A stretch of DNA of 64,000 nt, from contig NC_043011.1 of the NCBI RefSeq assembly GCF_006345805.1, positions 57,114,464 to 57,178,463 of the forward strand, in the 5' to 3' direction. The notes beneath the pieces are model-generated. The model did no database searches, was not told the origin of the DNA, and worked only from the letters and a program-made list of their open reading frames with translations. The DNA comes from Octopus sinensis (taxonomy: Eukaryota). The position numbers were made by a program, and so were the translations under genes. Positions 25,894 through 54,605 of the stretch are shown one piece after another (within the stretch, counting starts at the first letter, position 1; each line of letters opens with the position of its first letter).

Positions 25894-25897
<4 letters not shown>

Positions 25898-31564: not shown

Positions 31565-31594
<30 letters not shown>

Positions 31595-31761: not shown

Positions 31762-31794
<33 letters not shown>

Positions 31795-32201: not shown

Positions 32202-32233
<32 letters not shown>

Positions 32234-33399
32234 TATATATATAAATATATATATAAAAGGCGCTTGTGCCACTGCCATATAAAAGGTACCTGTGCTGGTG
32301 ACATATCAAAGGCATCCACTACACTCTTGGAATGGTTGGCATTAGGAAGGGCATCCAGCCATAGAAACCAAGCCAAATCAGACTGGAATCTGGTACAGCT
32401 CCAGTCAAACTGTCTAACTCATGCCAGCATAAAAAGCAGATGCTAAAAATGGTTATATATATATATATATATCAATATGACTGTGTGCTTGTGTGTACAT
32501 AAGTGTTTATGTGTACCCTTGTCTGGATATCACACGATGGTTGTAAATGAGCATCACTGTCATACAAGTGAGGTTGGTTGTCTCCAGTCTTCCATGAAAA
32601 ACATGTCCAACAATGGAAAATATTACCTAACTTGAAAACAGATGAGGGTTGGTAACAAGAAGGGCAGCTGGTCATAGAAAATCTGCCTCAATAAATCCTG
32701 TATGACCTACGCAAGCATGGAAAAGAGGACATTAAATGATGATGATGATATATTAGATTTTTTAAAATTCAGTGTAAAACTTAAAATTAAAAACAGGTGA
32801 GAATATAAACATGATTATATAATGGAGGATAGTACAATAACAGATGGAAACAAAAGATTTCCCTTATTGACATCCATACATATTTCTGTGAACTAAAGAA
32901 TGAGCAGTGATTGAGTTGAATGAAATCTGAAGAGTAAGAGAAATTCCTTGAACAAGTTAGCCATCCTATTCTTAAGTAATTAAGTTATTCTTTAAGTTTG
33001 TTTCAAGTCTTCAATAGATGGTCAATACTAATGATCAATTTGTCCAGCTATGTCATCAGTTATTGATTAACAAAAGAATTGGCTTCATGTCATAAGATTG
33101 CTTGGCTTGGAAAAGAAAGAAAAATCAATTCCTATTAGAAGCATGTATCTTCTTCAGATAAAAAAAAAAAACAGAAGACAGATGTTTAGTGTAATCTGCT
33201 GAGTAAGGTATGAAGCACACCCAAATCTGAATGCCAAAACAATAACAACAAAAAGAGCAAGATCTTTGGTCAGTGTTTCAACTATAATGCTCATTTTGGA
33301 GTTTAAAAACTCAGCTTGCCGAAGGGCTCAGTTTATAAAAGAGCTGTTTCAGAAATCCTCCATCCATTTTTGCCACCCATTATTCCAGGGAGGGTAGTA

Positions 33400-33660
33400 G
33401 CAGTAAAGTCCTCAAGCACCTTCTCCATAGGGTCCTAGCAGAAGCAACTGAAATAAAGGTCTCTCTTTGGATCCCTAATCATGGCCAACTGAGACCTGGT
33501 TGACCCCTAGGTCTCCTACCAGTTAGAACCTGTCTGTTGATCCTTTCTTGAGGCATCCTAACCACATGTCTGTAATACCAAAGCTGTGACCTCTCACTGT
33601 GAAGAAATAGTGGCTTGACCTGCAGAGTAAATAAATCATCATGGGTGCAGACCCAATGAC
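33400..33660 (-). mobile_element. RTE/Rex3-like LINE 3' remnant
   Basis: VKPLFLHSERSQLWYYRHVVRMPQERINRQVLTGRRPRGQP resembles EPLLL.IERSQLRWFGHVVRMP.ERL..GRRPRGRP. Confidence 0.8.
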
Positions 33661-34967
33661 CAGTGCACCAAGATGCCCAGTTTAAATGACCACCACAACA
33701 TGATGCTACATTTATAAGGCGTACCATTCAATGTGTCAGTTCACCAGGAAATGAGAGTAAAACAAGAGACCAACATTGGCTCACCATGGCTACAACCAGT
33801 TTGAAACTGGATCAGTGAATTGCTAAGTTTATCTATTTGGTGGAAGAAATGATGGACATTTAGTCTAAGGTGGACAACATCACAGGTTCTCACTTGTATT
33901 TCTATAAATCAGTTGTTTCTTTTATTGCAATCACTGGTTCATAGCATTTACGAGGTGAGACCAAATAAGCATCTTTACGATTCATGCAGATCACATGACA
34001 CACAAGATATTTGTTCAAAGGCATTGGCTAACACTTTCCTTCTCTTTTGATATTTACATCTATACTGGTGAGTGTGTGTGTGGGTGGGCAGTGACTTGCC
34101 AGAACCACTAAAGCAGACCATGTGGTATTTCAATTTGAATTCAAAACTTGCTGAGGGCAACTTTGTCTTTAATCTTTTTTGGTGGGGTTGATAAATATAG
34201 AATCGACCCAGTACTAGAGTTAATTTGTCTCTTTCTGGAGGGGGATCAACTGTGTCCAGAACTGCAGGTGGACTCTGCTATGTCCAAGTGACCCTGCTTA
34301 TTGTTGAGGCTTCATAGTGATAAACCTAGTTCCAGAAAATGATTTTAGAGAAAGAGACACAGAAGCATTGATGAAGCAAGGCTATGGTGGTACACAATTT
34401 CCTAAGGTGCCATGCAGTGGGATTGAACCCAACACCACAAGGCTGTAAAGGAACATCTTAAGCACACAACTAGGATTCACTCTTAACCATGGACTGATGC
34501 ACTTTTTTAATCACAGGAATGCATCTACCTTCTGAGACCACACAACTAAATCTGCACTGAACAACTTATCCAAAGACTAGACACTAATCCGTCTCTCCAG
34601 CTGGTCCTACAAATATTTTTATGAAAACTATCACAAGAAAATGCGCAAAAATTCAGATAACTTTTCTGATGCTGGAGATTATCGAAGTTTCGCTGATGTG
34701 TTTATCATAACACTGCATCAGAATGAATGTTTTTAGTTCAGACGCAGAACCCTCTTTACTCTGGATTATGTTTATATCATGCAGACTGTCTTCATCATCG
34801 TTTAACGTCTGCTTTCCATGCTGGCATGGGTTGGACAGTTTGACTGGGGACTGGCAAGCCAGGAGGCTGCACCAGGCTCCAGTCTGATCTAGCATGTTTC
34901 TCCGAGAGTGTAGTGGGTGATTTTTACGTGCCACTGGAACAGGAGCCAGTCAGGTGGCACTAGTATT

Positions 34968-35140
34968 GACCACGTTTGGATGGTGCTTTTTATGTGCTGC
35001 GGGGACAGGAGCGAGTTGGGGCGGAGAGGCTGGCATCGACCATGTTTGGATGGTGCTTTTTATGTGCTGCGGGCACAGGTGCCAGTTGGGGTGGAGAGGC
35101 TGGCATCGACCATGTTTGGATGGTGCTTTTTACGTGCCAC
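34968..35140. repeat. 70-bp tandem units inside a family A element
   Basis: The unit start gacca(c/t)gtttggatggtgcttttta recurs at 34968, 35038 and 35108. Confidence 0.92.
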
Positions 35141-36390
35141 TGGCATGTAAAAAGTTTAAAAAAAGTTTTAAAAGTTAATACCTTTAGACATAATGAGGAA
35201 CTATTTTTCATCGCTCATTAAGGTTAAGAGAAGAGGTTGCCATATTCAATTTGGTTTTTGTATCTATTCTCACCTATAATCATCAATGTTGGGTACTGAC
35301 GGAAAGAGTTGAATTACGAATACAAGAGGCAAAAACAGGGTTCCTCTGAAGGATTTCTCATGTTATGTTAGTCAATGGGGGTGCATAGCTCAAAGATCAG
35401 GATGTCTTTCCATGTTGACCAGTTACTTCTTGGGCACAGCTCTTGGACTATAGGCATGCGATTAGAATGTCACAGGAAAGAAGCACAAGACTGATTCTTT
35501 AAGCGAAGATAACTGATGGGAGACATAGGAGTACCTTATGTGCAAGATGATTGGATAATGTCCATAATGTCAGTTGGTCATACTTGAGGATTCTACCTTC
35601 ATGACCCTTGCAGGAATAGTGGGCAGAGAAGATGGATGGATGGATTATTGGTTAAATAGATATTTTAAGGGTATGAACAAAACACTAAGTTTAATGTATT
35701 AGTTTATGGATTTCAACAAAAGGAGTTAAAATTCCAAGGATGGCTGCGTGATTAGAGGTTCAACAACCAGGTTTCAAGTTTAGTCCCATTGCAAAAGACT
35801 TATGATAAGTGCCATCTACTATAGCCCAAGACTGACTGATGATTTGTGAGGTAATTTGGTAGATGCATACAGCAGGAACCCATTGTGTGTGTGTGTAAAG
35901 GGTAAAGACCCTTTCGGTCATGAATGACCATGGGATTTTACCTAGAAAGTTCCCTTGGCACAAGCATGACTGTATGATTGAGAAGCTTGCTTCCCGACCA
36001 CATAGTTTTAGGTTCAGTCCCACTGTGTGACATCTTAGGCAAGTGTCTTCAACAACAGCCCTCGGCTGACCACAGCCTTAAGAGTGGATTTGGTAGACAG
36101 AAACTGAAAGAATCCTGTTGTGTATATATGTATGCATGTGAGTAGGTTTGCATTTCCTTGTTTTAACCTCATGTAAATGAATGTCATTCACTTCTAGAGT
36201 TCTGTGAAATGTGAAAACACATCTGGCCATGAGGAAATATTACCTTGCTTGGAAACAGGTAAGGGTTGGTGACAGGAAGGGCATCCGACCATAGTAAAGC
36301 TGCATTAATATACTAACCCATGTAAGTATGGAAAAGTGGATGTTAAAGTGATTATATATAAACATACATGTGTGTGTGAATATACACATA

Positions 36391-37261
36391 GAGGGTGCAA
36401 TGGGTAAATTGTTGCCATTTTATATTTTTTATTTCACACAAGAACATGGTTTCTTTTTGATTTTGTCAACTACACAGTATAGTAGGATCAGTTGTGCACC
36501 ATCTGTGAGAAAAACAACACCATGACACAATTTACTCTGCCAGAAATTTGGAAATGACATGCTGTACTGTTTGGCATTCGCACTGGAATCTCCAATACGA
36601 ACATTTCAGAGTGTCTGGGTGTCAATCTGAGAACATGTACCAAGAGTGATAAAAATCAAACATCCAGTTAACATCATGGTGTTTGGAGTGAACACTAGTG
36701 ATGGCAATGTTATGTCTCCATTCATCTTCCCACATGGCCTCAGTCTCAACACAGAGGCCTGCATCAAGTACCAGGAGGAGGTAGTGCTGCCCTGGGTTAA
36801 GAAGGTGGCTGCTGGAAGACCCGATGTCTGGCAACAGAACTCTGCACCATGCCACACAAGCAGGAGAACCTAGTCATGGCTGTCAGACAATTTCTGCAAC
36901 CACATCACCCCTAACATCTGGCCACCTAACTCCCCAGACTGCAACCCCTTTCATTATTGTGTGGAGCACAGTTGAGAAAGAGACCAACAAAACTCCTTGT
37001 AACCCCAAAGATGAATGAAGGCAAGGACTTTGGCAGCATTTACTAACTTCAACAAGTTGACCGTCCAGAAAAGTTGCAGGAGATTCTGAAGTTGGCTGGA
37101 GGCTGTGGTTGAAGCCAATGGCGATTTTATTGAATAAATTAACTCTTCTTTAGTAATTCAAGATATTTTTATGCAATTTTGGTAAATATGTCAGTTAAAA
37201 TGAGATGTTTGTTATTTTTATATTTATGTAATTTAGACGACAGTTTATTCACCGCACCCAG
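36391..37261 (+). mobile_element. Internally deleted maT-like (DD37D) Tc1/mariner element, 871 bp
   Basis: TA-flanked imperfect TIRs (gagggtgcaatgggtaaattgttgcc and the reverse complement ctgggtgcggtgaataaactgtcgtc). Reads KHPVNIMVFG..WQQ(N)SAPCHTSRRT*SWLSDNF..IWPPNSPDCNPF(H)Y, with 37 residues between the second and third catalytic positions. The N-terminal HTH is fused almost directly to the catalytic half. Confidence 0.88.
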
Positions 37262-40200
37262 TACATTGATGTTCCAGGTTTGTCAACAGAAGAGAGAAAT
37301 GGTGATGATTTCCACATTACAACTAGTATTGACCAGACTATCAGATGTTGTTACACACAACTGGTCACAATGCACTTCCTTAATAAGTACTGGTCTTGAA
37401 AAACATGTACCGGGGTTGATCCATTTGAACAAAACCCTTCAAGACAGAGCTCCATGATGGGATGCAGTCCAAAGACTGAAACAAGCAAAAGATACAAGAG
37501 ATTAACAGGAAACTTTGGAAACACAAGAAGGACCAAACTTGAAGAATTCCATCTGCATTAATCAACTCTAGAGATCTGAAACATTTTCAAAACTAAAATC
37601 ATACTCAACTGGAATAGGTGGTAGTAAGTTCTGGGTAGTTTATTCTGAATGAGAGAACTATGTCTCTAGTGTTTACAAAATGATTCACCACTCCCTGTCT
37701 GGTCCTCATAATACAAGTTACTTGGTTACCTCACTGGTGCTGGTGCCATGTAAAAGCACCCAGTACACATTGTAAAGTGGTTGGCTTTAGGAAGGGCATC
37801 TAGCTGTAGAAACCATGTCAAAGCAACAGAGCCAGGAGCAGTTCTCTGCATTGCCAGTTCCTGTAAACTGCACAACCAAAGCTAGCATGAAAAACAGACA
37901 TCAACTGATGATGATACACTCATTCACTCACACACACAGGTGCAGGTATGGTTGTGTGGAAAGAAGTTTGTTCCCCAACCACATAGTTCTGGGTTCAGTC
38001 CCAGTGTGTGGCACATCTACTATAACCACAGCCCTGGGCAAGCCAAAACCTTGAGATTGGATCTGGAAGGTGAGAACTTTGTGTGTATGTGTGTGTCCGT
38101 CCTTGTCCTGACATCACATGATAGTTGTAAATGATTATCACCGTCATACAAGCAGTGTTGTTCATTTTCAATATTCTCTCTAGTCATGGAGGGGAAATAT
38201 TACCTTGCTTGGAAACAGGTGAGGAATGGCAACAGGAAAAGCATCTGGCCATAAAAAAAAATCTGCTTCAATATACTTCTTCCGACCCATTCAAGCATGG
38301 AAGAGTGGACGTTAAAATGACGATGATGAAGGGTGGAAATGTGTGCGTGTGTGTTCATGGCTACAACTTGGTGCCCTTTGACCGTTTCCTCAGAACTTAA
38401 TGAAAAACGCATACTTTTAATGAGATTTGTGTGGGGTTAAGATTTCGAGGATACACACTATAATTATGTGGATTAAATTTAAGAAGAAAAAAATTATATG
38501 TGAAGTTTCAGGTAATTTTCCGCGTATTTTTCTCCTTTTTCGTTTTAGTTATGCTTGAAACATCAACATTAAATAATCTACACGTCCGAAAACATATTTC
38601 AGCAAAATGTTATTTAAAGGCATGCGTTTTAAGGAGAGTTATGAGGAAACAAAATCCGCAAGCAGGAAAAAATGGTTCGCGTAGTCGTCCTCACGAAAAA
38701 AGATAAATAATAATAAATAATAATGATGATGATTTCAAATTTTAGCACAAGAGGAGGAGGTAAGTCGATTACATTGACGCCAATGCGTAACTGGTACTTA
38801 TTTTATCGACCCCGAAAGGATGAAAGGCAAAGTCGACCTCGGCGGAAGTTGAACTTACAATGTAAAGACGGACGAAATGTTGCTAAGCATTTTGCCCGGC
38901 ATGCTAACGATTCTGCCAGCTCACTGCCTTAATAATAAGAAATTTTGTCAACCTATACCATCGATAACATATCTCTGCCAAATTTCATTAAAAAATATGC
39001 ATTTTTCAAAGAAGCGGGGCACTAAACTGCATTTGTGTCTTCAGAAGTATTGTTTGTGGTTATTATTTCACGAAACCCTCCCCCGCACGTGTGGCCTTGT
39101 GCCAGTGTTGGGAAATCGATAATATGACAAGAATTCATATTGGTTCAATATGTATCGAATAAAACTTATTGCTATCTTTCTCTCTTTCAATCAACCGAGC
39201 CAAGAGGATGAAAGGTGGTTGGAATGCGCCCCTTCCACCTGCTGGAAACGGCACAGAAAAACATTCTCCCTTATAAAACACTTCCTTTTATCTTAAAACG
39301 GGGAGGGGGGAAAAAGAAAAGAAAAGAAAGAAAGAAAGCAAACACATTTCATAATGTAGTCCTGGTTAGGGTGCTCAGAAATTAGAGAGAATGACCATTG
39401 TTGGAATTATTTCGAATAGAACTAACCTGGGGGCTGAAACGATTACAGCAACTCAAATTTTCCAACCGAGTTCAGCGGGGTTTGTGTGTTTGCGTGTATA
39501 TATATATATATACACTGTTCACTTTCCAGACATTTGTACATTACTGCATTTGCTTTATACACACTTTTGACAAGTTGTGGTGCACTTGAGCACTGTATAC
39601 AATAATTTCATTATTATTATTATATACACACACACATAAATAAGCACATAGGTGTAAAACAAGGAGAGAAAGAAAGTACTTGAATGCCAAAAGTTGAATA
39701 ATATAGTATATTATTAAGTTTGAAACTGTTTAGCTTCAATGGCATGTATATATATCTTGCGCCCCCACACGTGCCTGTTTTCCCGACAGCATAAATACAA
39801 ACACAACTGAACTCTTTATCATAAGGTTATGTGTGAGTCATTATAATATGCTTTTAGGACTTAATCTGCCTTTCTTTACTTCCTCTACACACAGCAATTT
39901 CAAAGAGCAAAAAAATAACAAAGGAAAAAAAACAAAAAAAAAAGGCTAAGAATGAAACAAAAAGAAAAGTTTCAACCAGAATTCTCCTTTTAAAGCTTAA
40001 TTATTTTTACTTCCAAGATTTTTTTTCTCGTTATTCTTTAGAGAAAAATATGGCGAAATTATAAACAAAAATTGAAAGTATAATGCCAAAAACAACAGAT
40101 TCTAAAATTTCTTGGTCAATAATAGAAATTAATTAAATATCTGTCTATCTATTTATGCATGTATCGTCTATCTATAGCTTCTTCAAGTTCCATTTAATAT

Positions 40201-42651
40201 GTACAGGATGTTGAACTGTGTGTGAGCACATTGCAGTCTTGTCGAAACTATTGGCAAGTCTGAAACACTCTGAGTTCCTGAACGGAATACTGAATCAAAA
40301 GATTTAAATAAATAAAGAGATGAATAAAGAGAAGAAAAAAAAATATTGATACCCCCAAAATTAATGCCAACAATTTTTTTTTATAGCACTGGGGGTGATT
40401 GATAACGAAGAAAATAAAAGGCGTTTCTTATATAATATCGAGTTTAAATGGTGTTTCTTTTTTAAAAACTGATATCGTGCATATTGGTGAAAAAAAATCT
40501 GGTAGGAAGACGTGTGGATATAATAAAAGCTAATATAAAGGAATAAACATTTTAAAAATGCCAAACCAAAAATCTGTTAGTGGTAAATAAGCTAGGACAC
40601 TCATCACAGACATCATCATCTCTTCAGCAGCAACATTATGTTTCTACATAGATACCAAATCAATTATTATTATTATTTTTTTTTTGGCCATGCTAGTTCC
40701 CCCCATTTATCCAAGAAGAATGCTGGCATCAGAGGAGAGTAAATGGCCCAGTGGTTCTGGCATGTGTAAGGGAGAGAGAGTGGGAATTAGAGTAAAAAAA
40801 AAAATTGGCAAGAAAAATGTGGCGATCTCTGACAAGGAGGAGGAATGAGGGGAAATAAAGATCTTGTTGCTTTCAAAATATGGCAGTGGGATGGGATAGA
40901 AGAATAAACGCAACGACGATGGCCAAAAAGCTGGCTGTCCGACCACTCCAGCACCGATTTAGGGCAAACATGCTGAAAATAATAATATTTAGAGTTTATC
41001 ATGTAGGATTTTATATCAGAAAAAAAAATAGGAGGAGGTGGATTTGATAAGAAAAAAAAAAATTGGTGGATGATTCGATAACTATGGAAATAGTAATTTC
41101 TCCCAAATGGAAAAATAGTCCTAAAGAAGGAAACGGAAAAAAGAAACAGAATTAATTCAATGTATGGCACAAGAAGAAGAATAAGTTAGTAAATTTCAAT
41201 GAAAGCGAGTCGAGTAGTTTTAGTTCTATAAGGAATAACTGTAGTTTTATATAAAGAGATTTTTACTCGACTTGGTCAACAAAAACTGCCCACAAAAGAC
41301 TTTTTCAATAGGAAAAAAAAAAAAAATTGTAGAATCGAAGCTTTGTTATTTTTTTTTTATTTCCTTTATTTCATTGTTTCATGAATGTCAGAATAGAGAA
41401 GAATTCTTTCTCTCTCTCTCTCTTGCAGACTTGTGTGGACATAAAGGCGGAGAAAGAGAGAGAGAGAGAGAGACAGGCCTTCTAGAAGGTGGTGCTCAAT
41501 TAGAAAGAAAAAAAGAGAGCTAATGATGAATTATAATGAAAAAAAATGTTTTAAATTGTTCCGAAAATACTGAAGAAAAATGTTAAAGTGAAAACAGCGA
41601 GTGAGACCCGGAGACATCGGATGCATGGAAAGAGAAATTGGTAAAATCTCAAATGCTAAGCAGACACTAAGTTGATCTCTGTATGATTAAGCACCAAGGT
41701 TGGGGGGTTTAATATTATTCCATTTAATCCCATTCTTTTGCAATTTTAGTTATTTTATTTTTTTTTTAATATTCTCTGACGTGGATATTTTCTTTTGTTC
41801 TGGAAAATCCTACCTTCCAAGTATATAAATAAATAAATGAAAAAATGCGGGGAAAATAAAACAAATAAATGGCAGCAAAGTAGGAAGTGATGATGGTCGT
41901 TTCTTGTATTTTCCAAGTGTGGAGAGGATTTTTTCATATACGAGCAAACCAGCTGCTGCCAGCTTAGGTTTAGTTCTTGACTAAATCTGTGTATATTCGT
42001 AGTTGTGGAGATATTTCATGGTCTTATAAGATACGATAGGATACGAAGATATGAATGTAGAAGCAAAGATACATGAGAGAGAACAGAGAAGAGGCGAGCA
42101 ACTTGCTGTCGTCCTCCGTTCAGTCATTGTTACGAAAACGGTGAAACCATTAAACGAATCGGGAATATATATATATATGCAGTGGGGGGTTTTGTTTTCT
42201 CTCTCCCCCAGCTTTTATTATTTAGTTAGTCAATTTAAAAGATAAAATTTCATGAATTCGAAGCAGTAGTGGTTAATTAAAGACTAGAAAAAGCACTCGG
42301 AGGAGATCAGAAATAAGAGCAGATGGAAGGGAAAAACGGGAATACGGTGCGATGAAAAACAGCCAGAGAAAATCTACACGAAATGAATTAAATGTGGATG
42401 TGTGTATATATGGAAATGTGTTTAGGATGAAGAGAAATATATAAGAGGGTTGGGGGAATTTGGTGATATTTGTGTTCCCTGGTGAGGGTGTTTGGGAATG
42501 AGAGGAAGAAAATGAGGTATTTTTTGTGGCTGTGGAGTCTCGATTATGGTGAGGAGCGCTGCTACAATCAACAACTCAGCTGAGAAGAGAGAGAAAGGAT
42601 CATAAACAAACAGGAAATATATATATGTAAATCTTAATGTTTTTCGCCTAC

Positions 42652-42718
42652 CCGTGACATCGGAAGATTCTCCAGAGGGTGGCCCGTTGTCTCTGTGTGC
42701 TCCAATACACCCTCCCAT
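42652..42718 (-). CDS. UBTD1/2: Ubiquitin domain-containing protein (UBTD1/UBTD2 orthologue), coding exon 1
   Basis: ATG at 42718 (context GAAATGG) reads MGGCIGAHRDNGPPSGESSDVT+G, then a GTAGGC donor at 42651. This matches the recalled human UBTD2 N-terminus [23 protein letters not shown], with the same phase-1 exon end and an MGxC lipidation-type start. It lies head-to-head with MMS19, as UBTD1 does in human. Confidence 0.88.
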
Positions 42719-43065
42719 TTCATCTAGGGAAAGGTGGAGGACAGTTGAGCCAAAATAATCCGCTTGTAGAGGGAACCCCCTTCGAAGTGCAGCCGATCAC
42801 AACCACCGCGGCTTGGCCTGCTTCTCGTTCGATGACGTCACAATGCCGCCGTCTGTTTCGCAGTCGCAGCTCTGGACGCGCTTTGATACGTCAAAATTCA
42901 TGGATCTCCTTCAAATACTCACCATGCCTGCTTTTATTATCTCACTGCTCTAGCATCGTACAGCCATCCTACATTTATTACTATTCAAACCCAGCCATTG
43001 TAAATATTTATTATAGCCACGTTATATATGCATATATAGAAACGCAACTTGCAATATTGTTCATG

Positions 43066-43102
<37 letters not shown>

Positions 43103-43401
43103 CTCTCTCTCTCTCTCTCACTTTTTTTTTCTCTTATATAAATTCCAGAACATAAATTTTAATTTAAAACAAAAAAACCGGATATTTTGATATATAAAAT
43201 ATCTGAAATTTTTTTTTAGAAAAAAAAAAAAGTCAGCGATTTTAATGTGTTTATTTTAGTATAAATGTAGCTAAAAAAGCGTGTGTGTGTGTGTATATGT
43301 GTGTGTTGCTTGGTTCAGTGTGTTGATGTTGCTGCATGTATGTGTATGTGTCATAGATCCCTGTTATTGATGACGTCAGAATTATTGTGTTCTTGACAGA
43401 A
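42719..43401. promoter_or_regulatory. Bidirectional promoter / 5'UTR region shared by UBTD and MMS19
   Basis: 683 bp between divergent ATGs and locally CpG-retaining. Contains two perfect TGACGTCA palindromes (42833-42840, 43371-43378), a T9-AG-A12 tract (43209-43231), and (CT)n/(CTAT)n and (GT)n tracts. Confidence 0.75.
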
Positions 43402-43486
43402 ATGGCCGCTTCCAGCACGTGGAGTAACATTGTGGAGAACTATTTGGCCGGAGTCAATGATTCTGCTGCCTCACAAATTGCAATTG
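43402..43486 (+). CDS. MMS19: MMS19 cytosolic Fe-S assembly component, coding exon 1
   Basis: MAASSTWSNIVENYLAGVNDSAASQIAI+G, then GTTTGT. It aligns to the recalled human ...ALWGLVHDFVVGQQEGPADQVAAD, ends in phase 1 at the equivalent residue, and joins in frame to the exon at 63753. Confidence 0.88.
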
Positions 43487-44844
43487 GTTTGTTGTCAACA
43501 CTTTACTACATCATTCTCAGATATATCTAGCTGAAAAGCCCATGTCCTGTCGCTGTAAACCCATGTATTAATTGTCATTAATTGCGATGGTCGATGACTT
43601 TGTGTCATCGGACAAACAATGTTTGTATCGTTTCCAGCCACAAGTGTCCTTCCTGTTGCATTAATTCCTCTTGTCCATATATATTCTTCGTGATCTATGT
43701 TTTAAACTTCAAATGTGTCTGAATATATGTATGGATGTCTTGCTACCATCACGAATAAGCAAATCTGTTACATGTTTACGCATATATACCCACATATATA
43801 TATATATCTGTGTGTGCATGCTAGAGATATGTCAATATGTTGGTTATGTTTTCTTTTAATTCTTAGAATGTCTGTTTTCCTTCAACCTGGGATTTTTTTT
43901 TATTACGTACAATTAAAAGTTACTGTATTAGCTCCAGTTATTTGCCAAAATATTCAAAGAATGGCAACAGCTCTCTAAACGTTTGTCTGTTGAGACATGA
44001 ACCCGTTCACCCAGTGGAGATAATTGTTATTGAAGTCTCAAAACTAATTTAAAATACCTGTACAATTGGACACTTCTTAGCAATGATCTAATGTTCTTTT
44101 TTATTGTTTGTAGTCAAAAATCCAGTCCTGTTTCTAAAGATATGGCTCTCTGTTCCGTCTGTCATTGTAAAGTTTATTTGCTCTAAAACCCAATTTTATT
44201 GAAAAGTAATTAAACTCAGACAGAAGCTGACATTACTTTAGTTTTTATCTTTTTGGCAGACTTTATCATCATAATCACAATTATTATTTTTATTAAATGT
44301 CTATATTTTTGCTCTCCTTAATTAGATTTTATTGACAAAACAATTCTAAAAATATTGTGCAGCATTGTTATTTAAAAAAAAATTTAATTATATATTTGTT
44401 CATATTGGATATTAGCCAGCATAGGAGTTATTTATAACTTACAAAAATTCAATTGTCAAACATTATTAAACCGTATTCTTTGTATAATCACATATTAATA
44501 TATTATCTGTTAATGAAACCATAACCTTTCCTTGTTGTTAATGACCTCCCAGTCCGTATATTTCATTCCTCCAGACCTTCCTCTATGCTGTCAATCAATA
44601 TCAGCGGATTATTGATTAGCAAAAACCTGACTGACTCTGTTTATGTTTATAGAACACATAAATATATATTTATTTAGCAATACGTTTTACAGTAATCGTT
44701 AAGCCACAGCTATGAAATTCGTTCTCAGAATAATTTAAAATATATAAACAAAGTCATACTCCTCTCCTGTCCAACAGTCTTCCACTGTTGGAAAGTGGAC
44801 GCCAAAATAGAAACCATTTGAATTTTCAACATTCGATATTTTGG

Positions 44845-44891
<47 letters not shown>

Positions 44892-44905
44892 ATATATATA
44901 TATCA
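44845..44905. repeat. (TA)n microsatellite (representative; similar tracts at 4905-4965, 15482-15513, 24540-24590, 32200-32255, 54345-54372 and 54565-54601)
   Basis: Directly visible. Confidence 0.95.
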
Positions 44906-47760
44906 TATCATTCATATATAGATATCATGTATGTATATATCATTCATATATAAATTCTCTTAACTTTTAGTACCAAAATGTTTCAAAAACTTTGAGAAAT
45001 GTTCCACCTTTCAAATGCAATATTTAGTTTTTAAGTGTTTATATTTACTTTAACTTAATTGAAGAAACACATTTACTTTACTTCATACGTCCCTCAATTC
45101 TTTGACAACTTTCAACAAACCTAAATTATGTTTTCGCTATGACAGAAAAGCAAAAATATGAATGCCTATATCATTTCCCAAAATTGTTCGTTGTAAACTT
45201 TTTGTCGTGCGCGCGCGTGTATGTATATATGTATATATGCTTTCTTATTTGGGGCTAATAATACTTGGGTGGTACTTTTATTTTATCGATTGCGGGGTGG
45301 GATGAAAGGCAAAGTTGATATCGGGACGTTAAGAGCAGAAACAAAATACCGCGTGTCATCATCCTTCCCTCAACGAATGCTCCGACGATTCTGCGAATCC
45401 ACCCCATATATGTACGTGTGTGTATGTGGTGAGTGTAAATAAATCTAAACTATTGCCTCCCGGGTGTTCTACAGCAGGAAATTACTTTCTTAGCTTCTAA
45501 ATCTGCGATCAGTCTTCCTCCAATTTTCTTATTCTTGTTTTCTTTTTATCTGCAGTTGCTTCATAACTTTTTTTATTCTTTGGAATTTTCTGTATGAATC
45601 CCAGAAATCTTCTGAAAATTCAAAAAATAAAGTTATGGCGTACTCAAAGCAGAATTTCGCCCGTTTATTCTAACGAACAGATAGATTCATATTTCATTTA
45701 ATTATTTCAGTAAATTTATATTTGTTTAATGTAGACTGTGGTGTCTAAAGCGTCTTCTCCTGGTTCGGAAAAATCAATGATCTGGAAAGGTTTTGGAAAA
45801 TCGATGTTGTACGTGTAATTATATAGACACATCCGAACATTTTGGTAGGCTTGTCGAATAATATATATTACTTGGGAAGAAAATGACGTGTGTGTATTAA
45901 CATGAAGAGTGTGTTTGTACTAACTTAATGAACGAGGTACTGTCGCATTATACTTAAGTTCCACCCCTAATTCCGAAGACCACAATTGGGTCCCAACAGT
46001 ATGAGAAGGTACTCGTACACATCTCCCTTCTAAGCAAGTTATGTAGATAATTATTATGTATGTAACTAAACGGATAAATCTACTTTAAAACAAATTAAAG
46101 CAACATGTCTGTTTTTGGTACTATTGCTACCCTCCCTCCCTCCTGCACTCTAACAATATCTAACCAGGAAACGATCTCAGAATCGGTTTTTCTCCCCATC
46201 TGGCGACAATCATTAAACTTCTATTATGTTTATTTTAATTTTACTTTGAAATGTGTCGGTCGATGACGGCTCAGCTAGAGTTTGTTGTTATTAATAAACT
46301 TAACAGACAGAAACTAGAAAGCTAGGATAAAAACATGAATTCCATGAAAAGGAAAGTTAAGGAATTAAGTATCCTCCCAAGAATATTATTCCGTCAAGTA
46401 GAAGGAAGGAATCGTTAAAAAAAGAAAGGAAAAAAGCCTCTTTCAAAGACAAAACTATCAGTCATCATTTAACGTCCGTTTTCCACGCTGGCATGGGTTG
46501 GACTGTTTGACTAGAATTGTTTTTTAAAGATAAAAATGTAATCAAAAACAAAGTAATTTTATACATTTGACTGGGGTAGCTATGTCTTTCCTCTGTTTCA
46601 AGATGCAACAGCTCCCGTCTAACTTTCCAACCCATGCCAGCATGGAAAGTAGACGTTAAATGATGAAGATGACATTATTAGTGTAGTTGTCATCATTTGA
46701 ACTATTAACATCTGAAAGTGAAAGAGTGTTTATACTTGTTTTATGTTTGCCCCTTGGTCTGTTCTTCATTCTCCCACATTGTCTTTTTCTCTCACTTTCT
46801 TGTTCTTTGTCTGACACCCAGCCTTACTTACTCTTTGAGGTGAAAGATGAGTAGATAAGGAAAGGAAAATGTGTGGTAGCCTACCTATTAGTAATAAAAA
46901 GAAGGAAAGTGACAAATATGTAAAAACAAACAAAACAACCTAAATATAAATAAGTTTCTTCTGTCTTTACATATACATGTATATATAAAGTAATGTAAAC
47001 AGCTTGGTGCAGTATAAGATCATAGAGAAAAAAATTTATTGTCACTAATTGTGAGTGAAGGGTGCTTCAGCACTGTGTGTGCTTGTGTTGGTGATATAAT
47101 ATTGACAGATGTTTGTAGGTCAATATGTGTATGTAGAGGGTATCTGTTGACATTTAGTCTTGCATTTGGGTTTGTGGGTGGAGTCTAGTTTGTTGCTTCA
47201 CACAAGCTTGTGTTTATGTGTGTGTTTGTTTATGCTGTGAAATCTCTTCGCCACCCAAACTCTTTTTTTCCTCTTGCTTTCCCATTTCATTGATTTTCTC
47301 CATCACCCTCCACCTCCCCCCCACCATTAGTTGAATAATATAATGCACACATTATCTCTGTCAACTTTCTACAGGAACACACACACACACACACACAAAC
47401 TTGTAAGTATCCTTAGAGAGACTCCCATCCTGTTGGTTACGACTGAAATGCCTTTGACCAATAAGTCCAATCAACTGATATTGCTTAGTGTGATTTGGAG
47501 CTGGCAACATGTATTAATTAAATATTGAATATTGTTATTATTATTAGGGTGGTGAGCTGGCAGAATCGTTAGCACACTGGATGAAATGCTTAGCGGTATT
47601 TCATCTGTTGCAGCGTTGTGAGTTCAAATTCCACCGAGGTCAACTTTGTCTTGCATCCTTTCAGGGTCGATAAATTAAGTACCAGTAAAACACTGGGGTT
47701 GATGCAATTGATTATCCCCCGCTCCTCCAAATTTCAGGCCTTGTGCCTATAGTAGAGAGA

Positions 47761-47792
<32 letters not shown>

Positions 47793-50700
47793 GGTGGCGA
47801 GCTAACAGAATCCTTATTGTGCTGGCCAAAATGGTTGGCTGCATTTGTCTGTCTTTACATTCTGATTTCAAATTCAGCCAAGGTCAACTTTGCCTTTCAT
47901 CCTTTCAAGGTTGATAAAATAAACTGATAGAATTGTTATCACGCTGGGCAAAATGCTTAGTGGTATTTTGTCTGTTGCTTTGTTCTGAATTCAAATTCCA
48001 CTGAGGTTGACTTTGCCTTTCATCCTTTCAGGGGGTCAATAAATTAAGTACCAGTAAAACACTGGGGTTGATGTAATCGACTAGTCCCCCTCCCTAGAAT
48101 TTCAGGCTTTGTGCCTTTAGTAGAAAGTATTTGTGTTATTTTTCATTTCGTTTCAAAGTTTCCTGTCTTCAGACCCTAAATGTAATTTTCTAATTTTTAT
48201 GTATGTCATTTACTTAATTAAACTAAATTTCACAGTATTTGACCTTTTGTTTGTATGAAGTTTTAAAAACTGTTTGAAATCTCAATAAATTGAATTTCAT
48301 TATTTAAACAATCATATTATGTTAGGTTAGTTTTCTTTTGTTTGTTTTAAATGGTAACAATCAAAGCTGGAATTTGTTGTGCCATTCACATATTCTAATT
48401 AAAATTTTTTTCTAATTCTGTAATGTTGTAAATATCACAAACCCACTTTCATTGAAGCATCTACATTTGAATCAAATCATTTTGAAGTTTATTGATCACT
48501 GTAATTATTTCTAGATAAGCTAATGCCTTTACACAGTTGCTTTAGCTGCTAGAAATAGCGGCAAATCTCCCTCAAACCACACCATAGCATCTTTAAAAAG
48601 TAGGAGGGCATGTTGAATAATGTGGTTTTGATAACAAGAAGGGATGATGATGATCATCATCATCATCGTTTAACGTCCGTTTTCCATGCTAGCACAGGTT
48701 GGACGGTTCGACCGGGGTCTGGGAAGCCAGGCAGCTACACCAGGCTCCAGTCTGATCTGGCAGTGTTTCTGCAGCTGGATACCCTTCCTAACGCCAACCA
48801 CTCCGTGAGTGTAGTGGGTGCTTTTTATGTGCCACCGGCACAGGTGCCAGGGCAAGCTGGCAGCGGCCATGATCGGTTGATGCTTTTTACGTGCCACTGG
48901 CACAGAAGCCAGTCAGGCCACATTCGGATGGTGCTTTTTACGTGCCACCGGCACAAGTATCACCACAATTGGAAAGCGCTTTGATCATATGTCTGACCAC
49001 TGTGCTGGACGACAACTCCTTTTAATTTTGTTTATGCATTATACTTATGTACATACATACGTATGCATGCATGCTGGTGTTACATAAGAACACACCTGTG
49101 CTGGTGCCACATGAAAATCTCCCATGTTGGTACCACATAAAATGCATCCAGTATACTCTGTAAAGTGGTGGGCATAAGGAAGGGCATCCAGCTGTAGAAG
49201 CCATGCCACAAGAAACAACTGGAGCCTGGTGCAACTTGCCTGTTTGCCAGACTGGTCAAACCACCCAACCCATGCCAGCATGGAAAACAGACACTAGATG
49301 ATGATGATGATGATGATGATGATATATATTGACGGTGCATATAGATATAAAGAGAAATGGTTAATGAATAAATCTTATTGAACTGCTCGTCTAGTCATAT
49401 TGACTCGTTGGCAGCTTAATTAATTCAGCATAGTTTGAATAGTTTTTGTCAATATCCATAGACTGTCTTTGTTGGAAATTGTCCTTCATAATATTTTAAT
49501 GCTACTTGGGTGGTTGTCTGTTGGCTGGAATAGAATGCACTGGGCTAAATGTTTGTAGTTGTTGTGTTGAGAGAAGAAATATAACAAGAGTAGTCAGGAG
49601 ATGAAACAAACAGATAGGAGTGACTGCCACCACTGACTCTGTTTAGCCAGTTTTTATCAGAGACCACTATTATAATCAGGGTAGAGCCATATCTTCAGTT
49701 ATTAGTACACTGTACAACCATTCACTGTATGGTGGTGATGGTGGTTCTATGTGGTCATTGAACCTGTTACAAACAGCAGCCAGATCTCTCTTTAATTCTA
49801 ATTTTGGTACAAGGCCAGTTATTTTGAGGAGACAGGGAGGAAGTCAATTAGGTTGACACCAGTGCTTTCAGCTGGTGCTTATTTTATCAAACCCCAAAAG
49901 GATGATTGGCAAAAGTTAACCTCAGCCACATTTGAACTCAGAATGTTAAAAACTAGAAGAAAAGTACCATGGCATTTTTTTCTGGCACTGTAATGAGTCT
50001 ACCAGCTCACTGCACTTTGTCATAACTCTTTTGGTACCAACTCCTCTAACACCCTGAAACTACCCCTGATTCTCTGAAACAAACTTCCTGTTTTAGAGTG
50101 ATCAAAATTAAAATTTTCCAAAGAACCATTTATTTTTCTTTGTATTTTACAACTATTAATCTGTCCCTCTCAATCTTGTTTTACCCTCCCCTATCATCCT
50201 GCCTAGAACTTTTACTCACTCATTTTCTTTCAATTAAAAGGGCCGCTTTAGGAAATTAATCTTGCAAGTTGATTCCACTAGTGCTGGTGCCATGAGGAAA
50301 TAAAAAGTAGCCACTACATTTTATATAGTGCTCAGAACCAGAAAGAGCATCGAGCTATAGAAACTGTGCTGAAGCAGACGTTAGAGCCCAACGCTGTTCT
50401 CTGACTTGTCCTCTGCTGTTGATCTGTCCACCTCTTGCCAGCATGGTAGATGGGTGTTAAAATGACCACAAGGACTTTTCACTGATGTATATTGGTGAAA
50501 CATAAATGCACACACATGTGCCCCCCCCCCCACACATGTGCACCCCCCACACACACAAATACATGCACACGCACATGTATGATGGCCTTTTGCACAGTTT
50601 CTGTCTATTATATTCCATGCAGGCGGCGAGCTGGCAGACACGTTAGCGCACTGGGTGAAATGCTTAGCGGTATTTTGTCTGTCGTTACGTTCTGAGTTCA

Positions 50701-52570
50701 AATTCCACCGAGGTCGACTTTGCCTTTCATCCTTTCGGGGTCGATAAATAAAGTACCAGTTTCGCACTGGGGTTGATGTAATCGACTTAATCCCTTTACC
50801 TGTCCTTATTTGTCCCCTCTATGTTTAGCCCCTTGTAGGCAATAAAGAAATATATATTCCATGCAGTAAAGCATCAACCAAACTTTGGTTATAGAAGTTG
50901 TCACTTGCCCAAAGTACCATGTTATGCAATTGAACTGGGAAGCATGGGATTTGAAGCAAGTTCCTTAACCTCACATCCCTGCCTGGTGAAAATGCAATTT
51001 CAGTGATGCAACGGATTGACTTGCTGCACTCGACTCTCACAGTGCACATCTTTCACTGCTTTACATTGGTAGGAAACAATGTGTGGTGTCATGCAGGTAC
51101 ATACCTATTTCTTTACTACCCACAAGGGGCTACACACAGAGGGGACAAACAAAGACAGACAAACGGATCAAGTCGATTATATCGACCCCGAAAGGATGAA
51201 AGGCAAAGTCGACCTCAGCGGAATATGAACTCAGAACGTAAAGACGGACGAAATACTGCAAAGCATTTCGCCCAGGGTGCTAACGTTTCTGCCAGCTCGC
51301 TGCTTTTGCAGGTACATACCTGTATTACATATAGATATGTAATACATGTTATACATCTGTGTGGTTAAGAAGTTTGCTTCTAAACCACATGGTTTCAGAT
51401 TCAGTCAGTCCCTGTGCTTGGCATCTTGAACAAGTTTTTTAACAGCTCCAGGCTGACTGAAGTCTTCTGAGTGGATTTGGAAGATAGAAATTGAAGAAGC
51501 CTATTGTGTGTGTGTGTCGGTTGGTTGGTCGTTGTGTGATAGTTGTAAATGAGTGTTGCTGCCATGCATACAGTGTCATCCAGTATTCTATAAAAACATG
51601 TCTGGCTTTGGGAAAATATTACTTTGCTTAGAAACAGGTGAGGGTTGGCGACAAGAAGGGGTCTGGCCATAGAAAATCTGCTTCAATAAAAAAAATCCAT
51701 CTGACCCGTGCAAGCATAGGAAAAGGGGGGTGGGGTCATGGAAATAAAGACGATGATGATATACATACATATAAAAGCAAATGCATGCAACAGCTTTCCA
51801 AGTAGTTCCCATACATGAAATCCCACTCTCAGATTGTTGCTATGGTGGGACATGCTATCCAGACAATCTCGGTAGAAACTACTGAGATTAAAGACCAGTG
51901 CTTTCTAGATGTTTAAAGCTCACACTGTTCAACCTTTGAATTGTTACTGGGCTTTTTTTTTTTTTTTTTTTTAAATTTCAATTTAGCTTTTAAATTATAG
52001 CCTTTGTGTTGCATCCAACACCTGGACCGTACAACAATTGTCTCCTTGTGAAGTTACAACAGAAATAAAACACCTGTCATGTGAAATATTCACATATATG
52101 AATATATACATGCAGGCACACATAAGACATTTTAGACAGAGGCATTTTAGACTAAAAAACAAAATAACAGTGTTGTCAGATTTCAAGATGACACAAAATG
52201 ATTGAGAGAGAGAGAGATGATGGTGGTGGTGATTGGAGAAGGGCGGGCAGGCTACGCTGTAGAACCTGTCTAACTAAATCTTGCCAACCTGAGAGTGGGA
52301 TAGGAACAATGATAATGTTGACTGCCCCTGAACAAAATACACAATGATAAGAGTGCAGTTGTTAGTACAGGATTACTGGCTTGAAAACCTTAGGAGTTTA
52401 AATTCTAACACCAACCTTCTCTCCTTCCTGTGTTATTGTCTTTTTAGCTCTAAAGGCTGTGAAGTTGATAACAATAAAAAACAAAAGTGTCAAGGAGGAG
52501 AAAGTGAAGCAAAGAATAAGTTAGAAGAAAAGGCATTAATACAGCAGATTGTGTTGCTTGCTTTGTAGTA

Positions 52571-52955
52571 CAGTAATCCGTCACCAAATTGCAGTTCACT
52601 TATTGCGGTTTATTATTTAAGCTTACGTCAATTCCTCCGTGGTGTTGTTTTGCATCTATAATAAAATAAATATATATCATCATCATCGTTTAATGTCTGT
52701 TTTCCATGCTAGCATGGGCTGGACGGTTTGACCGGGATCTGGGAAGCCAGAAGGCTGCACCAGGCTCTAGTCTGATCTGGCAGTGTTTCTACAGCTGGAT
52801 GCCCTTCCTAACGAGGATACCCTTCCTAACGAGATGCCCTTTATACAAATTATAAAAATAATATACAGTACAGTACTGTTTCTACTTTGTGGATTTTCAC
52901 CTATTGCGGTGGGGTTTTGGACTGTAACACCCCCACAATAGTTGAGGGATTATTG
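52571..52955. mobile_element. pogo/Tigger-like MITE split by a family A insertion (52678-52843)
   Basis: Both halves match the reverse complement of 14875-15095; TATA is duplicated around the inserted A element. Confidence 0.82.
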
Positions 52956-54339
52956 TATTTCTTCCAACTCCTTTATATTCTGAGTTCAAATTTCGCCAAG
53001 GTTGACTTTGCCGTTCATCCTTCTGGGATCAACGAAATAGGTTCTAGCTGAGCATTTGGGTTGATGTAATTAATTAGCGCCTTCCCATAAAATATCATTG
53101 TCTTCATCAATGACCTACCTTGTGAACTGAATGTGTTGACAGAAAACAAGCTTGTCTGGTGTGTGTGTGTCCAGAGCTGGATGTGGTGATGTCATTTCTC
53201 TTGTCACCAAATACTGTTGGTTGTTTACCTTCAAAGATGTGCAAAATAAGAGATCCTTTACTTGAACAACAGGTAAGGGTTAGCAACAGGAAAGGTATCC
53301 AGCTGTAAAACCCTATAATCATCTAACCATTACGAACATGGACAAAACAAACACAAGAATGAATGAATTTACAATTTCTTGCAGTGATTCTATGTTACAA
53401 GACTGTCTTGCCACCCTTTCCTCCTTTCAGTAACAAAACAATGAGACATCTGTTAATTGCACAGTGCTCCTTCTGTCTGCAACAGTGGACTTAATACTCT
53501 CTCATGGTATACAAGTGGAAAGAAGAAAAATTAGTATATCGTTGATAGTAGCACTTGATACTATGACAAGGTAGGACTGAATAGTAAGCCTGACCCCATC
53601 AGCTCTGTTTCATTTAGATCTGTGGTGTGATAAGTCTGTTGAGTAAGATATTTTCAAATATGTCCATCCTGTCTTTGTGTGATATGACAGCGTCTCAATA
53701 TTTATGACTAAGATGGCAAGCTAGCAGAATTGTTAACATCTCAGACAAAACACTTAATGGCATTTCTTCCTACTCCTTAAGTTCTGGGTTTGAATTCTAC
53801 CAAGGTGAACTTTGTCATTCATGCTTTCAAGGTTGATAAAGTACGTACCACTTGGGCATTGATGTCAATATAATTGGCTCCCACCACAATGACTGACCTT
53901 GTGCCAAAATTAGAAATATTTAAGACTAGAAGCATGCTTTGTTGAGAGAGAGATTTCAGCACTGACAGATTTTTATCTGCTTCTAGTTGCTGATATTCAT
54001 TGAATGGTCTCCAGCTCTTCCTTGCCTTTCTCTATTCTGGTTACCATTTCAGAATTTACTTAATTCTTACTTTACAATCATCTCATGTTCTTGACATTTG
54101 AGCTGCTGTCCTTATCGCAAACAATATAATATTACTTTTTCTTTTTTTTTATCTCTGCTTAAGTTAATCTCATTTATTAGGCAAAAATTTGTTTAATTCT
54201 CTCTGCTTGGAGAATATCTGCATAAATTATGCTTTCATCTTGAAATGACCTGATCTTTTTTTTTCATATATATGTTAAAGCCCATCTTTGTGGGTTTTGT
54301 GCTGTTTTAGATTCAGACAGCATTCCTCACACCTTTTTG

Positions 54340-54372
<33 letters not shown>

Positions 54373-54377
<5 letters not shown>

Positions 54378-54563: not shown

Positions 54564-54605
<42 letters not shown>

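What the first reader, a model, noticed from the sequence alone, without database searches (positions are those of the whole stretch)
42652..43486. Head-to-head MMS19-UBTD gene pair apparently conserved between a cephalopod and human
Seen: a UBTD-type exon 1 (-) and an MMS19 exon 1 (+) diverge with only 683 bp between ATGs. Established (recalled): human MMS19 and UBTD1 are head-to-head on chr10 across a very short intergenic gap. Inference: this divergent linkage dates to the bilaterian ancestor and survived the extensive genome rearrangement of coleoids, suggesting a constrained shared promoter linking cytosolic Fe-S assembly with a ubiquitin-domain protein. I do not know whether this microsynteny has been reported.
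Basis: partly seen in the sequence, partly recalled or inferred. Interest (0 to 1): 0.75.

Follow-up and report, generated by a model that had tools for sequence, protein, structure and literature searches.

The report
Ancient divergent MMS19–UBTD gene pair
In this octopus genome the first exons of the Fe-S-assembly gene MMS19 and the single UBTD ubiquitin-domain gene point away from each other across 683 bp, and the same neighbour pairing shows up in other molluscs, an annelid, a sea spider and a hemichordate, so it is a real, very old but fairly ordinary example of a conserved bidirectional gene pair.

Summary
Window 42652-42718 (-) is coding exon 1 of the genome's only UBTD gene. Window 43402-43486 (+) is coding exon 1 of its only MMS19 gene. 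683 bp separate the two ATGs.

Spliced transcript contigs from four runs join 42652 to UBTD exon 2, 66 kb away. They also join 43486 to MMS19 exon 2 at 63753, 20.3 kb away. Annotated Octopus proteins start with exactly these peptides.

The interpretation of an ancient linkage is supported.
- Five metagenomic animal contigs show the same head-to-head layout, with ATG-to-ATG gaps of about 214-653 bp.
- UBTD and MMS19 have consecutive or near-consecutive protein accessions in Octopus, Lottia, four bivalves, the sea spider Nymphon, the hemichordate Ptychodera, the annelid Owenia and a crinoid.
- The pair is missing upstream of UBTD in arthropod-like and cnidarian-like contigs, so it has been lost in some lineages or is bilaterian-specific.

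A TGACGTCA palindrome lies 69-115 bp upstream of the UBTD ATG in four of the six head-to-head loci.

The human arrangement is recalled, not tested. A functional link between the two proteins is not shown. I found no earlier report of the pair. It is a new member of a known kind, conserved bidirectional pairs.

The parts
1..42651 (-). 3' part of UBTD intron 1. The whole intron is about 66 kb. Exon 2 lies outside the window at G000:C15:57090856-57091086.
   Evidence: UBD-domain exons found at C15:57090826-57091071 and 57077225-57077320 on the minus strand. The exon 2 acceptor ttccag|TTTCTATTGG was read in L003. Transcript contigs jump from 42652 to that sequence.
42652..42718 (-). UBTD coding exon 1: MGGCIGAHRDNGPPSGESSDVT plus the first base of the next codon (phase 1). 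The N-terminal MGxC looks like an acylation-type start.
   Evidence: sequence; 22 of 22 identity to P0002, and a unique match; contigs in X1, X2, X3 and X13 fit from 42652, and in X1, X2 and X13 the listed loose end there continues into exon 2.
42719..42831 (-). Minimal UBTD 5' UTR. One contig (run X3) extends it to 43025.
   Evidence: table 8: UBTD contigs end at 42781, 42818, 42831 and 43025. Contig ends are only lower bounds for the TSS.
42833..42840 (.). TGACGTCA palindrome (CRE/ATF-like), 115 bp upstream of the UBTD ATG and just beyond the 5' ends of three UBTD contigs.
   Evidence: only 2 matches in the 64 kb window, both in this intergenic region, against 0.39 expected; the same octamer lies 69-89 bp upstream of the UBTD ATG in L027, L037 and L038.
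43067..43119 (.). (CT)n microsatellite inside the AT-rich middle of the intergenic region.
   Evidence: GC falls to 0.23-0.27 at 43000-43300.
43371..43378 (.). Second TGACGTCA palindrome, 24 bp upstream of the MMS19 ATG and at the 5' end of the longest MMS19 5' contig.
   Evidence: the X2 contig starts at 43374.
43374..43401 (+). Minimal MMS19 5' UTR.
   Evidence: table 8: MMS19 contigs begin at 43374, 43397, 43401 and 43405.
43402..43486 (+). MMS19 coding exon 1: MAASSTWSNIVENYLAGVNDSAASQIAI plus the first base of a Gly codon (phase 1).
   Evidence: identical to the N-terminus of the annotated Octopus vulgaris MMS19 (P0364); contigs in 4 runs continue from here into exon 2.
43487..63752 (+). 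MMS19 intron 1 (20,266 bp).
   Evidence: Donor G|GTTTGT at 43486/43487 and acceptor tttcag|GT at 63752/63753. The junction is seen in contigs.
63753..63801 (+). MMS19 coding exon 2: completes the Gly codon, then LTNKEVNLLEIVQCL and two bases of the next codon.
   Evidence: The loose-end consensus AACAAATAAAGAAGTTAATCTCCTTGAAAT equals this exon.

Best explanation
This is the 5' junction of two real, expressed, single-copy genes transcribed away from each other. One is the octopus pro-orthologue of vertebrate UBTD1/UBTD2, on the minus strand with 3 coding exons over about 80 kb. The other is MMS19, on the plus strand and spanning more than 55 kb.

The first exons are 683 bp apart ATG to ATG. The outermost transcript-contig ends are 348-542 bp apart, so the two genes are driven from one compact divergent promoter region. 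The head-to-head layout was inherited from at least the protostome-deuterostome ancestor. It was kept in cephalopods even though the flanking first introns grew to 66 kb and 20 kb.

Inferred, not shown: the pair persists because the two core promoters and their shared proximal elements are packed too tightly to be separated or invaded without damaging one of the genes. Those elements include TGACGTCA (CRE/ATF-type) sites next to both starts. This would give broadly co-regulated, housekeeping-like expression.
For: Gene identity
- PF16455 hits only two minus-strand exons on this contig, at 94.3 and 35.8 bits.
- PF14500 and PF12460 hit only plus-strand exons downstream of the window.
- The exon 1 peptides equal the annotated and transcript-derived octopus proteins.
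- The splice phases fit.

Transcription
- Contigs of 447-3481 nt from 4 runs, 4 studies and 2 organism labels carry both exon1-exon2 junctions.

Age of the layout
- Head-to-head layout with gaps of 238-653 bp occurs in L027, L037, L038 and L083, and about 214 bp in L043.
- UBTD and MMS19 have consecutive accessions in Octopus vulgaris, O. bimaculoides, Lottia, Mercenaria, Mizuhopecten, Argopecten and Nymphon. In Ptychodera they are two apart. They are close in Owenia, Mya, Ylistrum and Antedon.

Compactness and motif
- The intergenic gap stays at 683 bp or less while the flanking introns are 30-100 times larger.
- TGACGTCA occurs only twice in 64 kb, both times here.
- The same octamer lies at a similar distance from the UBTD ATG in 3 other head-to-head loci, and in none of the 10 loci checked where no MMS19 was found upstream of UBTD. 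It is also missing from head-to-head L043 and L083.
Against: - True transcription start sites are unknown, because Logan contigs cannot show starts.
- One UBTD contig reaches 43025. The two CRE-like sites are 530 bp apart, so these may be two separate promoters rather than one shared one.
- The motif is missing from L043 and L083. L037 and L038 are related bivalves, so they are not independent.
- With 6 of 100 shuffles giving 2 or more matches, the window count alone is weak evidence.
- The pair is absent within 3-10 kb upstream of UBTD in arthropod-like and cnidarian-like contigs, so any constraint is not absolute.
- Co-expression in octopus was not measured.
- Orientation in the named species is inferred from accession order only.
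Confidence: 0.72

Rival explanations
1. Neutral persistence. The pair is ancestral, but it is kept only because a 0.2-0.7 kb intergenic target is rarely hit by rearrangement breakpoints. There is no shared regulation and no functional relation between the two genes.
For: - The pair has been lost in several lineages without obvious consequence. These are the arthropod-like contigs L025, L053, L084 and L085 and the cnidarian-like contigs L060 and L062.
- In octopus the two CRE-like sites and the contig 5' ends suggest two core promoters about 0.35-0.55 kb apart.
- No known biochemical link between UBTD and MMS19 was found in the papers searched.
Against: - The octopus lineage inflated the adjoining introns to 66 and 20 kb, yet the intergenic gap stayed at 683 bp. 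That argues for purifying selection against insertions there.
- A TGACGTCA site recurs at similar positions in distant head-to-head loci.
- A human tumour data set reports positive UBTD1-MMS19 expression correlation, r = 0.36 (PMC13388116).
Confidence: 0.24
2. Convergence. Cephalopods and vertebrates acquired the MMS19-UBTD juxtaposition independently.
For: Coleoid genomes are heavily rearranged (general knowledge; PMC9023564 abstract). Some lineages lack the pair.
Against: Adjacent gene models on the same contig or chromosome occur in gastropod, bivalves, sea spider and hemichordate, and close ones in an annelid and crinoids. Five independent head-to-head contigs were found.
Confidence: 0.02
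3. Mis-assigned exon. The 22-residue minus-strand exon belongs to another gene, or is a chance ORF.
For: The exon is very short and lies 66 kb from the next UBTD exon.
Against: Spliced contigs in three runs continue from 42652 directly into the first bases of UBTD exon 2. The peptide is identical to the N-terminus of the octopus protein and nearly identical to that of Lottia. No other copy exists in the intron.
Confidence: 0.01

Closest known systems
Human/vertebrate MMS19-UBTD1 divergent pair on chromosome 10 (recalled, not tested here; a smelt BAC carries both genes, PMC3499448)
   Same: The same two gene families. Divergent orientation and a sub-kilobase gap, as I recall for human. UBTD has 3 coding exons, a very short first coding exon (MGxC...) and a very long first intron.
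   Different: The octopus has a single UBTD gene, which is pro-orthologous to both UBTD1 and UBTD2. By similarity it looks more like UBTD2. The human intergenic sequence and any CRE site there were not examined.
Conserved head-to-head pairs with bidirectional promoters and ancient metazoan microsynteny (for example Irimia et al. 2012, PMC3514665)
   Same: Two unrelated genes kept as divergent neighbours with a very short gap across phyla. Lineage-specific losses occur.
   Different: I could not verify that this pair is in any published list. The supplements of PMC3514665 are not held, and the names are absent from the supplements of PMC9023564 and PMC8851819. Surveys that use blocks of 3 or more genes would miss a two-gene pair.
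CRE/ATF-site promoters (TGACGTCA bound by CREB/ATF bZIP factors; general knowledge)
   Same: Perfect 8-bp palindromes lie within about 25-115 bp of both start codons. The octamer recurs upstream of UBTD in three other animals' head-to-head loci.
   Different: No binding or activity data exist for these sites. The motif is absent from two head-to-head loci, and the statistical support is modest.

Membership tests
UBTD (UBTD1/UBTD2, DC-UbP) family | N-terminal UBD domain (Pfam PF16455) | tested here: met
   two minus-strand exons at 94.3 and 35.8 bits, both over the 27-bit cut-off. These are the only hits in the genome.
UBTD (UBTD1/UBTD2, DC-UbP) family | C-terminal ubiquitin-like domain (PF00240) | tested here: met
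   Exon 3 in L004 is 92% identical over 133 residues to P0002. The precomputed Pfam for P0002 lists PF00240 and PF16455. The genomic exon itself was not rescanned against Pfam.
UBTD (UBTD1/UBTD2, DC-UbP) family | The window's exon 1 is spliced to the UBD exon and encodes the conserved MGGCxG N-terminus | tested here: met
   loose ends at 42652 equal the reverse complement of the exon 2 start read. N-termini in Lottia and Liolophura are the same or nearly so.
MMS19 (MET18) family | MMS19_N (PF14500) and MMS19_C (PF12460) domains on the same strand downstream of the exon | tested here: met
   54.6 and 44.4 bits; 50.2 and 36.9 bits. All hits are on the plus strand of C15, 27-55 kb downstream, and are the only hits in the genome.
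MMS19 (MET18) family | The window's exon 1 is the true N-terminus | tested here: met
   P0364 (Octopus vulgaris MMS19) residues 1-45 equal window exon 1 plus exon 2. N-terminal profile at E 1.8e-5; the splice to exon 2 is seen in 4 runs.
Bidirectional (head-to-head) gene pair | Divergent orientation with less than 1 kb between the starts | tested here: met
   683 bp lie between the ATGs. Transcript contigs approach to within 348-542 bp of each other. The exact TSSs are not known.
Bidirectional (head-to-head) gene pair | Shared regulatory element and co-expression | tested here: inconclusive
   CRE-like octamers sit at both ends and are partly conserved. No expression levels can be obtained from contigs. 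Only a human tumour correlation of r = 0.36 was found.
Ancient conserved microsynteny (bilaterian) | The same neighbour pair in both protostome and deuterostome phyla | tested here: met
   Consecutive or near-consecutive accessions on the same contig in molluscs, Nymphon and Ptychodera, and close ones in Owenia and Antedon. This is indirect, since orientation was not read. Orientation was read directly in 5 unnamed metagenome contigs.
Ancient conserved microsynteny (pre-bilaterian) | The pair is present in cnidarians | tested here: not met
   in cnidarian-like contigs L060 and L062, UBTD exon 1 is at 7904 and 7255, and no MMS19 lies in the 7-8 kb upstream. This samples one anthozoan-like lineage only.

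The most novel reading that the evidence does not exclude
The pair has been kept for more than 500 million years because the two products work in one pathway. For example, UBTD could act as an E2-binding adaptor that tunes the ubiquitin-dependent turnover of MMS19 and the cytosolic Fe-S targeting complex, with both genes driven together by a conserved CRE/ATF-responsive divergent promoter.
Probability: 0.08. Interest if true: 0.65.

Novelty: new member of a known kind. Interest (0 to 1): 0.38.

Why it matters
The finding gives a cleanly documented divergent gene pair that survived the coleoid genome reshuffling and a roughly 100-fold intron expansion with its sub-kilobase gap intact. That makes it a useful natural test case for asking what keeps bidirectional promoters together.

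UBTD proteins are poorly understood. A neighbour relation with MMS19 that is as old as bilaterians is a cheap, testable hint about co-regulation or a shared pathway.

It does not change any general picture. Hundreds of such conserved pairs are already known as a class.

Tried and rejected
I could not read neighbours and orientation directly in named animal genomes. I used contig lengths, accession order and metagenome contigs instead.
- **The search of earlier findings** returned nothing near this place.
- **Paper searches** found no report of the pair. I searched MMS19+UBTD1, MMS19+'bidirectional promoter', MMS19+microsynteny and UBTD1+'head-to-head'. The supplements of PMC3514665 are not held. 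The supplements of PMC9023564 and PMC8851819 do not contain the names.
- **RefSeq XP numbers** are not always positional. Liolophura, Pecten and Ostrea have both genes on one chromosome but distant accessions, so I count them as uninformative rather than negative.
- **Gutless-worm-type contigs** L068-L070, L075 and L076 show no MMS19-like start within the 0.5-1.3 kb available upstream of UBTD exon 1. This is too short a stretch to call absence.
- **L052**, a fish-like UBTD1 contig, has only 2.8 kb upstream and is uninformative.
- **Spliced models.** Exons were searched one by one by reference, so the joined step was left out.
- **Possible mammalian contigs.** L044 and L045 are 100% identical to a mammalian UBTD2 exon and could be human. 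They were in the first batch scans, before I recognised them. I then excluded them and did not save, compare or search them further.
- **No human sequence** was fetched or searched. The human layout is from memory.

Full report
**Where the window lies.** The window is G000:C15:57114464-57178463 of a 2.72-Gb genome. Contig C15 is 67,901,367 bp long. That is the contig length recorded for the Octopus sinensis MMS19 proteins (XP_029645965.1, XP_036365686.1). The UBTD entry P0490, shared by three Octopus species, also carries an O. sinensis-series accession (XP_029645891.1). The genome is therefore O. sinensis or something indistinguishable from it.

**Observation.**
- On the minus strand, an ATG at 42718 opens MGGCIGAHRDNGPPSGESSDVT. 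It is followed by one more base (42652) and a GT donor.
- On the plus strand, an ATG at 43402 opens MAASSTWSNIVENYLAGVNDSAASQIAI. It is followed by one base (43486) and a GT donor.
- 683 bases lie between the two ATGs.

**The minus exon is UBTD exon 1.**
- The UBD domain (PF16455) hits only two places in the whole genome. Both are on the minus strand of C15, 66 kb and 80 kb beyond the exon.
- The ORFs there read like UBTD exons 2 and 3.
- A word search with exon 2 returned P0002, a 233-residue protein from transcript-sized contigs of a close octopus relative. It starts MGGCIGAHRDNGPPSGESSDVT|VSIGRNQPL.
- The window exon matches P0002 at 22 of 22 residues. No second copy exists in the 66-kb interval.
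- The exon 2 acceptor is ttccag|TT TCT ATT GGA. The phase-1 G of exon 1 completes the Val codon exactly as in P0002.
- Logan contigs of 1046-1195 nt from four runs fit the window from 42652. Where the loose ends are listed, they continue with the reverse complement of the exon 2 start.
- A junction across 66 kb can only come from spliced RNA, so the exon is expressed as part of UBTD.
- This is the only UBTD gene in the genome, so it is pro-orthologous to both vertebrate paralogues.

**The plus exon is MMS19 exon 1.**
- MMS19_N and MMS19_C match only plus-strand exons on C15, 27-55 kb downstream.
- A full-library search with one MMS19_N exon gave MMS19 representatives from many phyla.
- A 30-position profile of their N-termini ranks the 43402 exon first among 3446 six-frame segments of the window, at E 1.8e-5.
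- Exon 2 lies at 63753-63801, with a matching phase-1 acceptor.
- The annotated Octopus vulgaris MMS19 (P0364, CAI9735793.1) and the Argonauta protein begin with exactly exon 1 plus exon 2.
- Contigs of 447-3481 nt from four runs start at 43374-43405, run to the end of exon 1 and continue into exon 2.

**Anatomy of the gap.**
- UBTD contigs reach 42781, 42818 and 42831, and in one run 43025. MMS19 contigs start at 43374 or later. The untranscribed core is therefore at most 348-542 bp.
- Contigs cannot show true start sites.
- GC peaks at 0.54 next to the UBTD exon and falls to 0.23 in the middle. The middle holds a (CT)n run and A/T tracts.
- The palindrome TGACGTCA occurs twice in the 64-kb window, against 0.39 expected. 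Six of 100 shuffles reached two matches.
- Both copies are in the gap. One is at 42833, 115 bp upstream of the UBTD ATG. The other is at 43371, 24 bp upstream of the MMS19 ATG.

*Route 1: metagenome contigs.* A metagenome scan with a UBTD alignment gave 80 loci.
- Five loci carry MMS19 on the opposite strand immediately upstream of UBTD.
  - L027 has a nearly complete MMS19 gene and a 297-bp ATG-to-ATG gap.
  - L037 has a 238-bp gap and L038 a 265-bp gap. Both have bivalve-like proteins.
  - L083 has a 653-bp gap and unclear affinity.
  - L043 has a gap of about 214 bp, and its MMS19 N-terminus match is weak.
- Arthropod-like loci L025/L032, L053, L084 and L085 show no MMS19 within 3-10 kb upstream of UBTD exon 1.
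- Cnidarian-like loci L060 and L062 show none within 7-8 kb.

That includes small scaffolds:

| Species | Shared scaffold size |
|---|---|
| Nymphon | 0.39 Mb |
| Ruditapes | 0.55 Mb |
| Ylistrum | 0.91 Mb |
| Anneissia | 1.37 Mb |
| Lottia | 1.83 Mb |
| Mizuhopecten | 2.2 Mb |

*Route 3: protein accessions.* These are consecutive or close in the following species:

| Species | UBTD | MMS19 | Relation |
|---|---|---|---|
| Octopus vulgaris | CAI9735791 | CAI9735792-95 | consecutive |
| Octopus bimaculoides | XP_014789268 | XP_014789269 | consecutive |
| Lottia | ESO87853 | ESO87854 | consecutive |
| Mercenaria | XP_045188983 | XP_045188984 | consecutive |
| Mizuhopecten | OWF55074 | OWF55073 | consecutive |
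| Argopecten | XP_069139370 | XP_069139369 | consecutive |
| Nymphon | KAG1659352 | KAG1659353 | consecutive |
| Ptychodera | XP_070539632 | XP_070539634-37 | two apart |
| Owenia | CAH1783559 | CAH1783557 | close |
| Mya | WAR22376 | WAR22381 | close |
| Ylistrum | XP_060063592 | XP_060063604 | close |
| Antedon | XP_071948240 | XP_071948228 | close |

Accession order is a proxy for gene order and says nothing about strand. Together with the five contigs where strand was read, it places the pair in molluscs, annelids, a chelicerate, a hemichordate and crinoids.

For vertebrates I rely on recall of the human and mouse MMS19-UBTD1 layout. I also have a 162-kb smelt BAC that carries both UBTD1 and MMS19 (PMC3499448).

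The simplest reading is one origin, at or before the protostome-deuterostome ancestor. Some arthropods later lost the pair. Anthozoans either lost it or never had it.

**Motif.** TGACGTCA lies 69-115 bp upstream of the UBTD ATG in the octopus, L027, L037 and L038. It is absent from L043 and L083, and from all 10 checked loci where no MMS19 was found upstream of UBTD. This is suggestive of a conserved promoter element. The sample is small, and L037 and L038 are related.

**Mechanism.**
- *Shown:* two expressed genes, divergent, with a gap of 683 bp or less. The neighbourhood is ancient.
- *Inferred:* the gap is a compact bidirectional promoter region whose tight packing resists both breakage and insertion. 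The contrast with the 66-kb and 20-kb first introns in the same genome is the best argument for constraint.
- *Main rival:* whether the constraint reflects co-regulation, or merely the small size of the target for rearrangement, cannot be decided here.
- *Not claimed:* I found no evidence for a biochemical link between UBTD and MMS19. The only related datum is a weak positive expression correlation in human tumour data (PMC13388116).

**Novelty.** I found no report of this pair in the searchable library. The class, conserved head-to-head pairs and ancient microsynteny, is well known (PMC3514665). I rate this as a new member of a known kind, of modest interest.

**Procedural notes.**
- No human sequence was fetched.
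- L044 and L045 are possibly mammalian or human UBTD2 contigs. I set them aside once I recognised them.

Noticed in passing
window 42833-42840 and 43371-43378; L027:9211, L037:1420, L038:614: The only two TGACGTCA palindromes in the 64-kb window flank the two first exons. The same octamer sits 69-89 bp upstream of the UBTD ATG in three other head-to-head loci. It is absent upstream of UBTD in head-to-head L043 and L083 and in the 10 loci checked where no MMS19 was found upstream.
   Followed up: partly
window 42652-43025: One UBTD transcript contig (run X3, 1099 nt) extends the 5' end to 43025. That is about 200 bp further than the contigs of the other three runs. It may be an alternative upstream start or a longer 5' UTR.
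   Followed up: no
window 41313-41423, 41752-41769, 41822-41848: Many unrelated transcript contigs touch these places for only 18-25 bases and then run on unlike the window. They look like short pieces of a dispersed repeat inside UBTD intron 1.
   Followed up: no
window 42313-42648: Low-depth contigs (depth 3-5) cover intron sequence just downstream of UBTD exon 1. They carry A>G at 42415 and 42433, G>A at 42487 and T>C at 42518. There is also a G>A at 42784 in the 5' UTR in two runs. These are most likely differences between individuals or unspliced pre-mRNA. RNA editing cannot be judged without DNA from the same animal.
   Followed up: no
window 9392-10031: ORFs of 160-210 codons are open in several frames on both strands of the same 640 bp. 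This is typical of a low-complexity or repeat stretch without stop codons.
   Followed up: no
L060:7904-10393, L062:7255-9579, L058: Cnidarian-like contigs from metagenomes (84-93% identical to Exaiptasia UBTD) carry a compact 3-exon UBTD gene. No MMS19 lies in the 7-8 kb upstream, so the pair is not head-to-head in this anthozoan-like lineage.
   Followed up: partly
L044, L045: Metagenome contigs with an exon 100% identical to mammalian UBTD2. They are possibly mammalian or human contamination and were set aside without further study.
   Followed up: no
Octopus bimaculoides entries: The O. bimaculoides annotation splits MMS19 into a 110-residue N-terminal model (XP_014789265.1) and an 863-residue model (XP_014789269.1). 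The long first introns probably broke the gene model.
   Followed up: no
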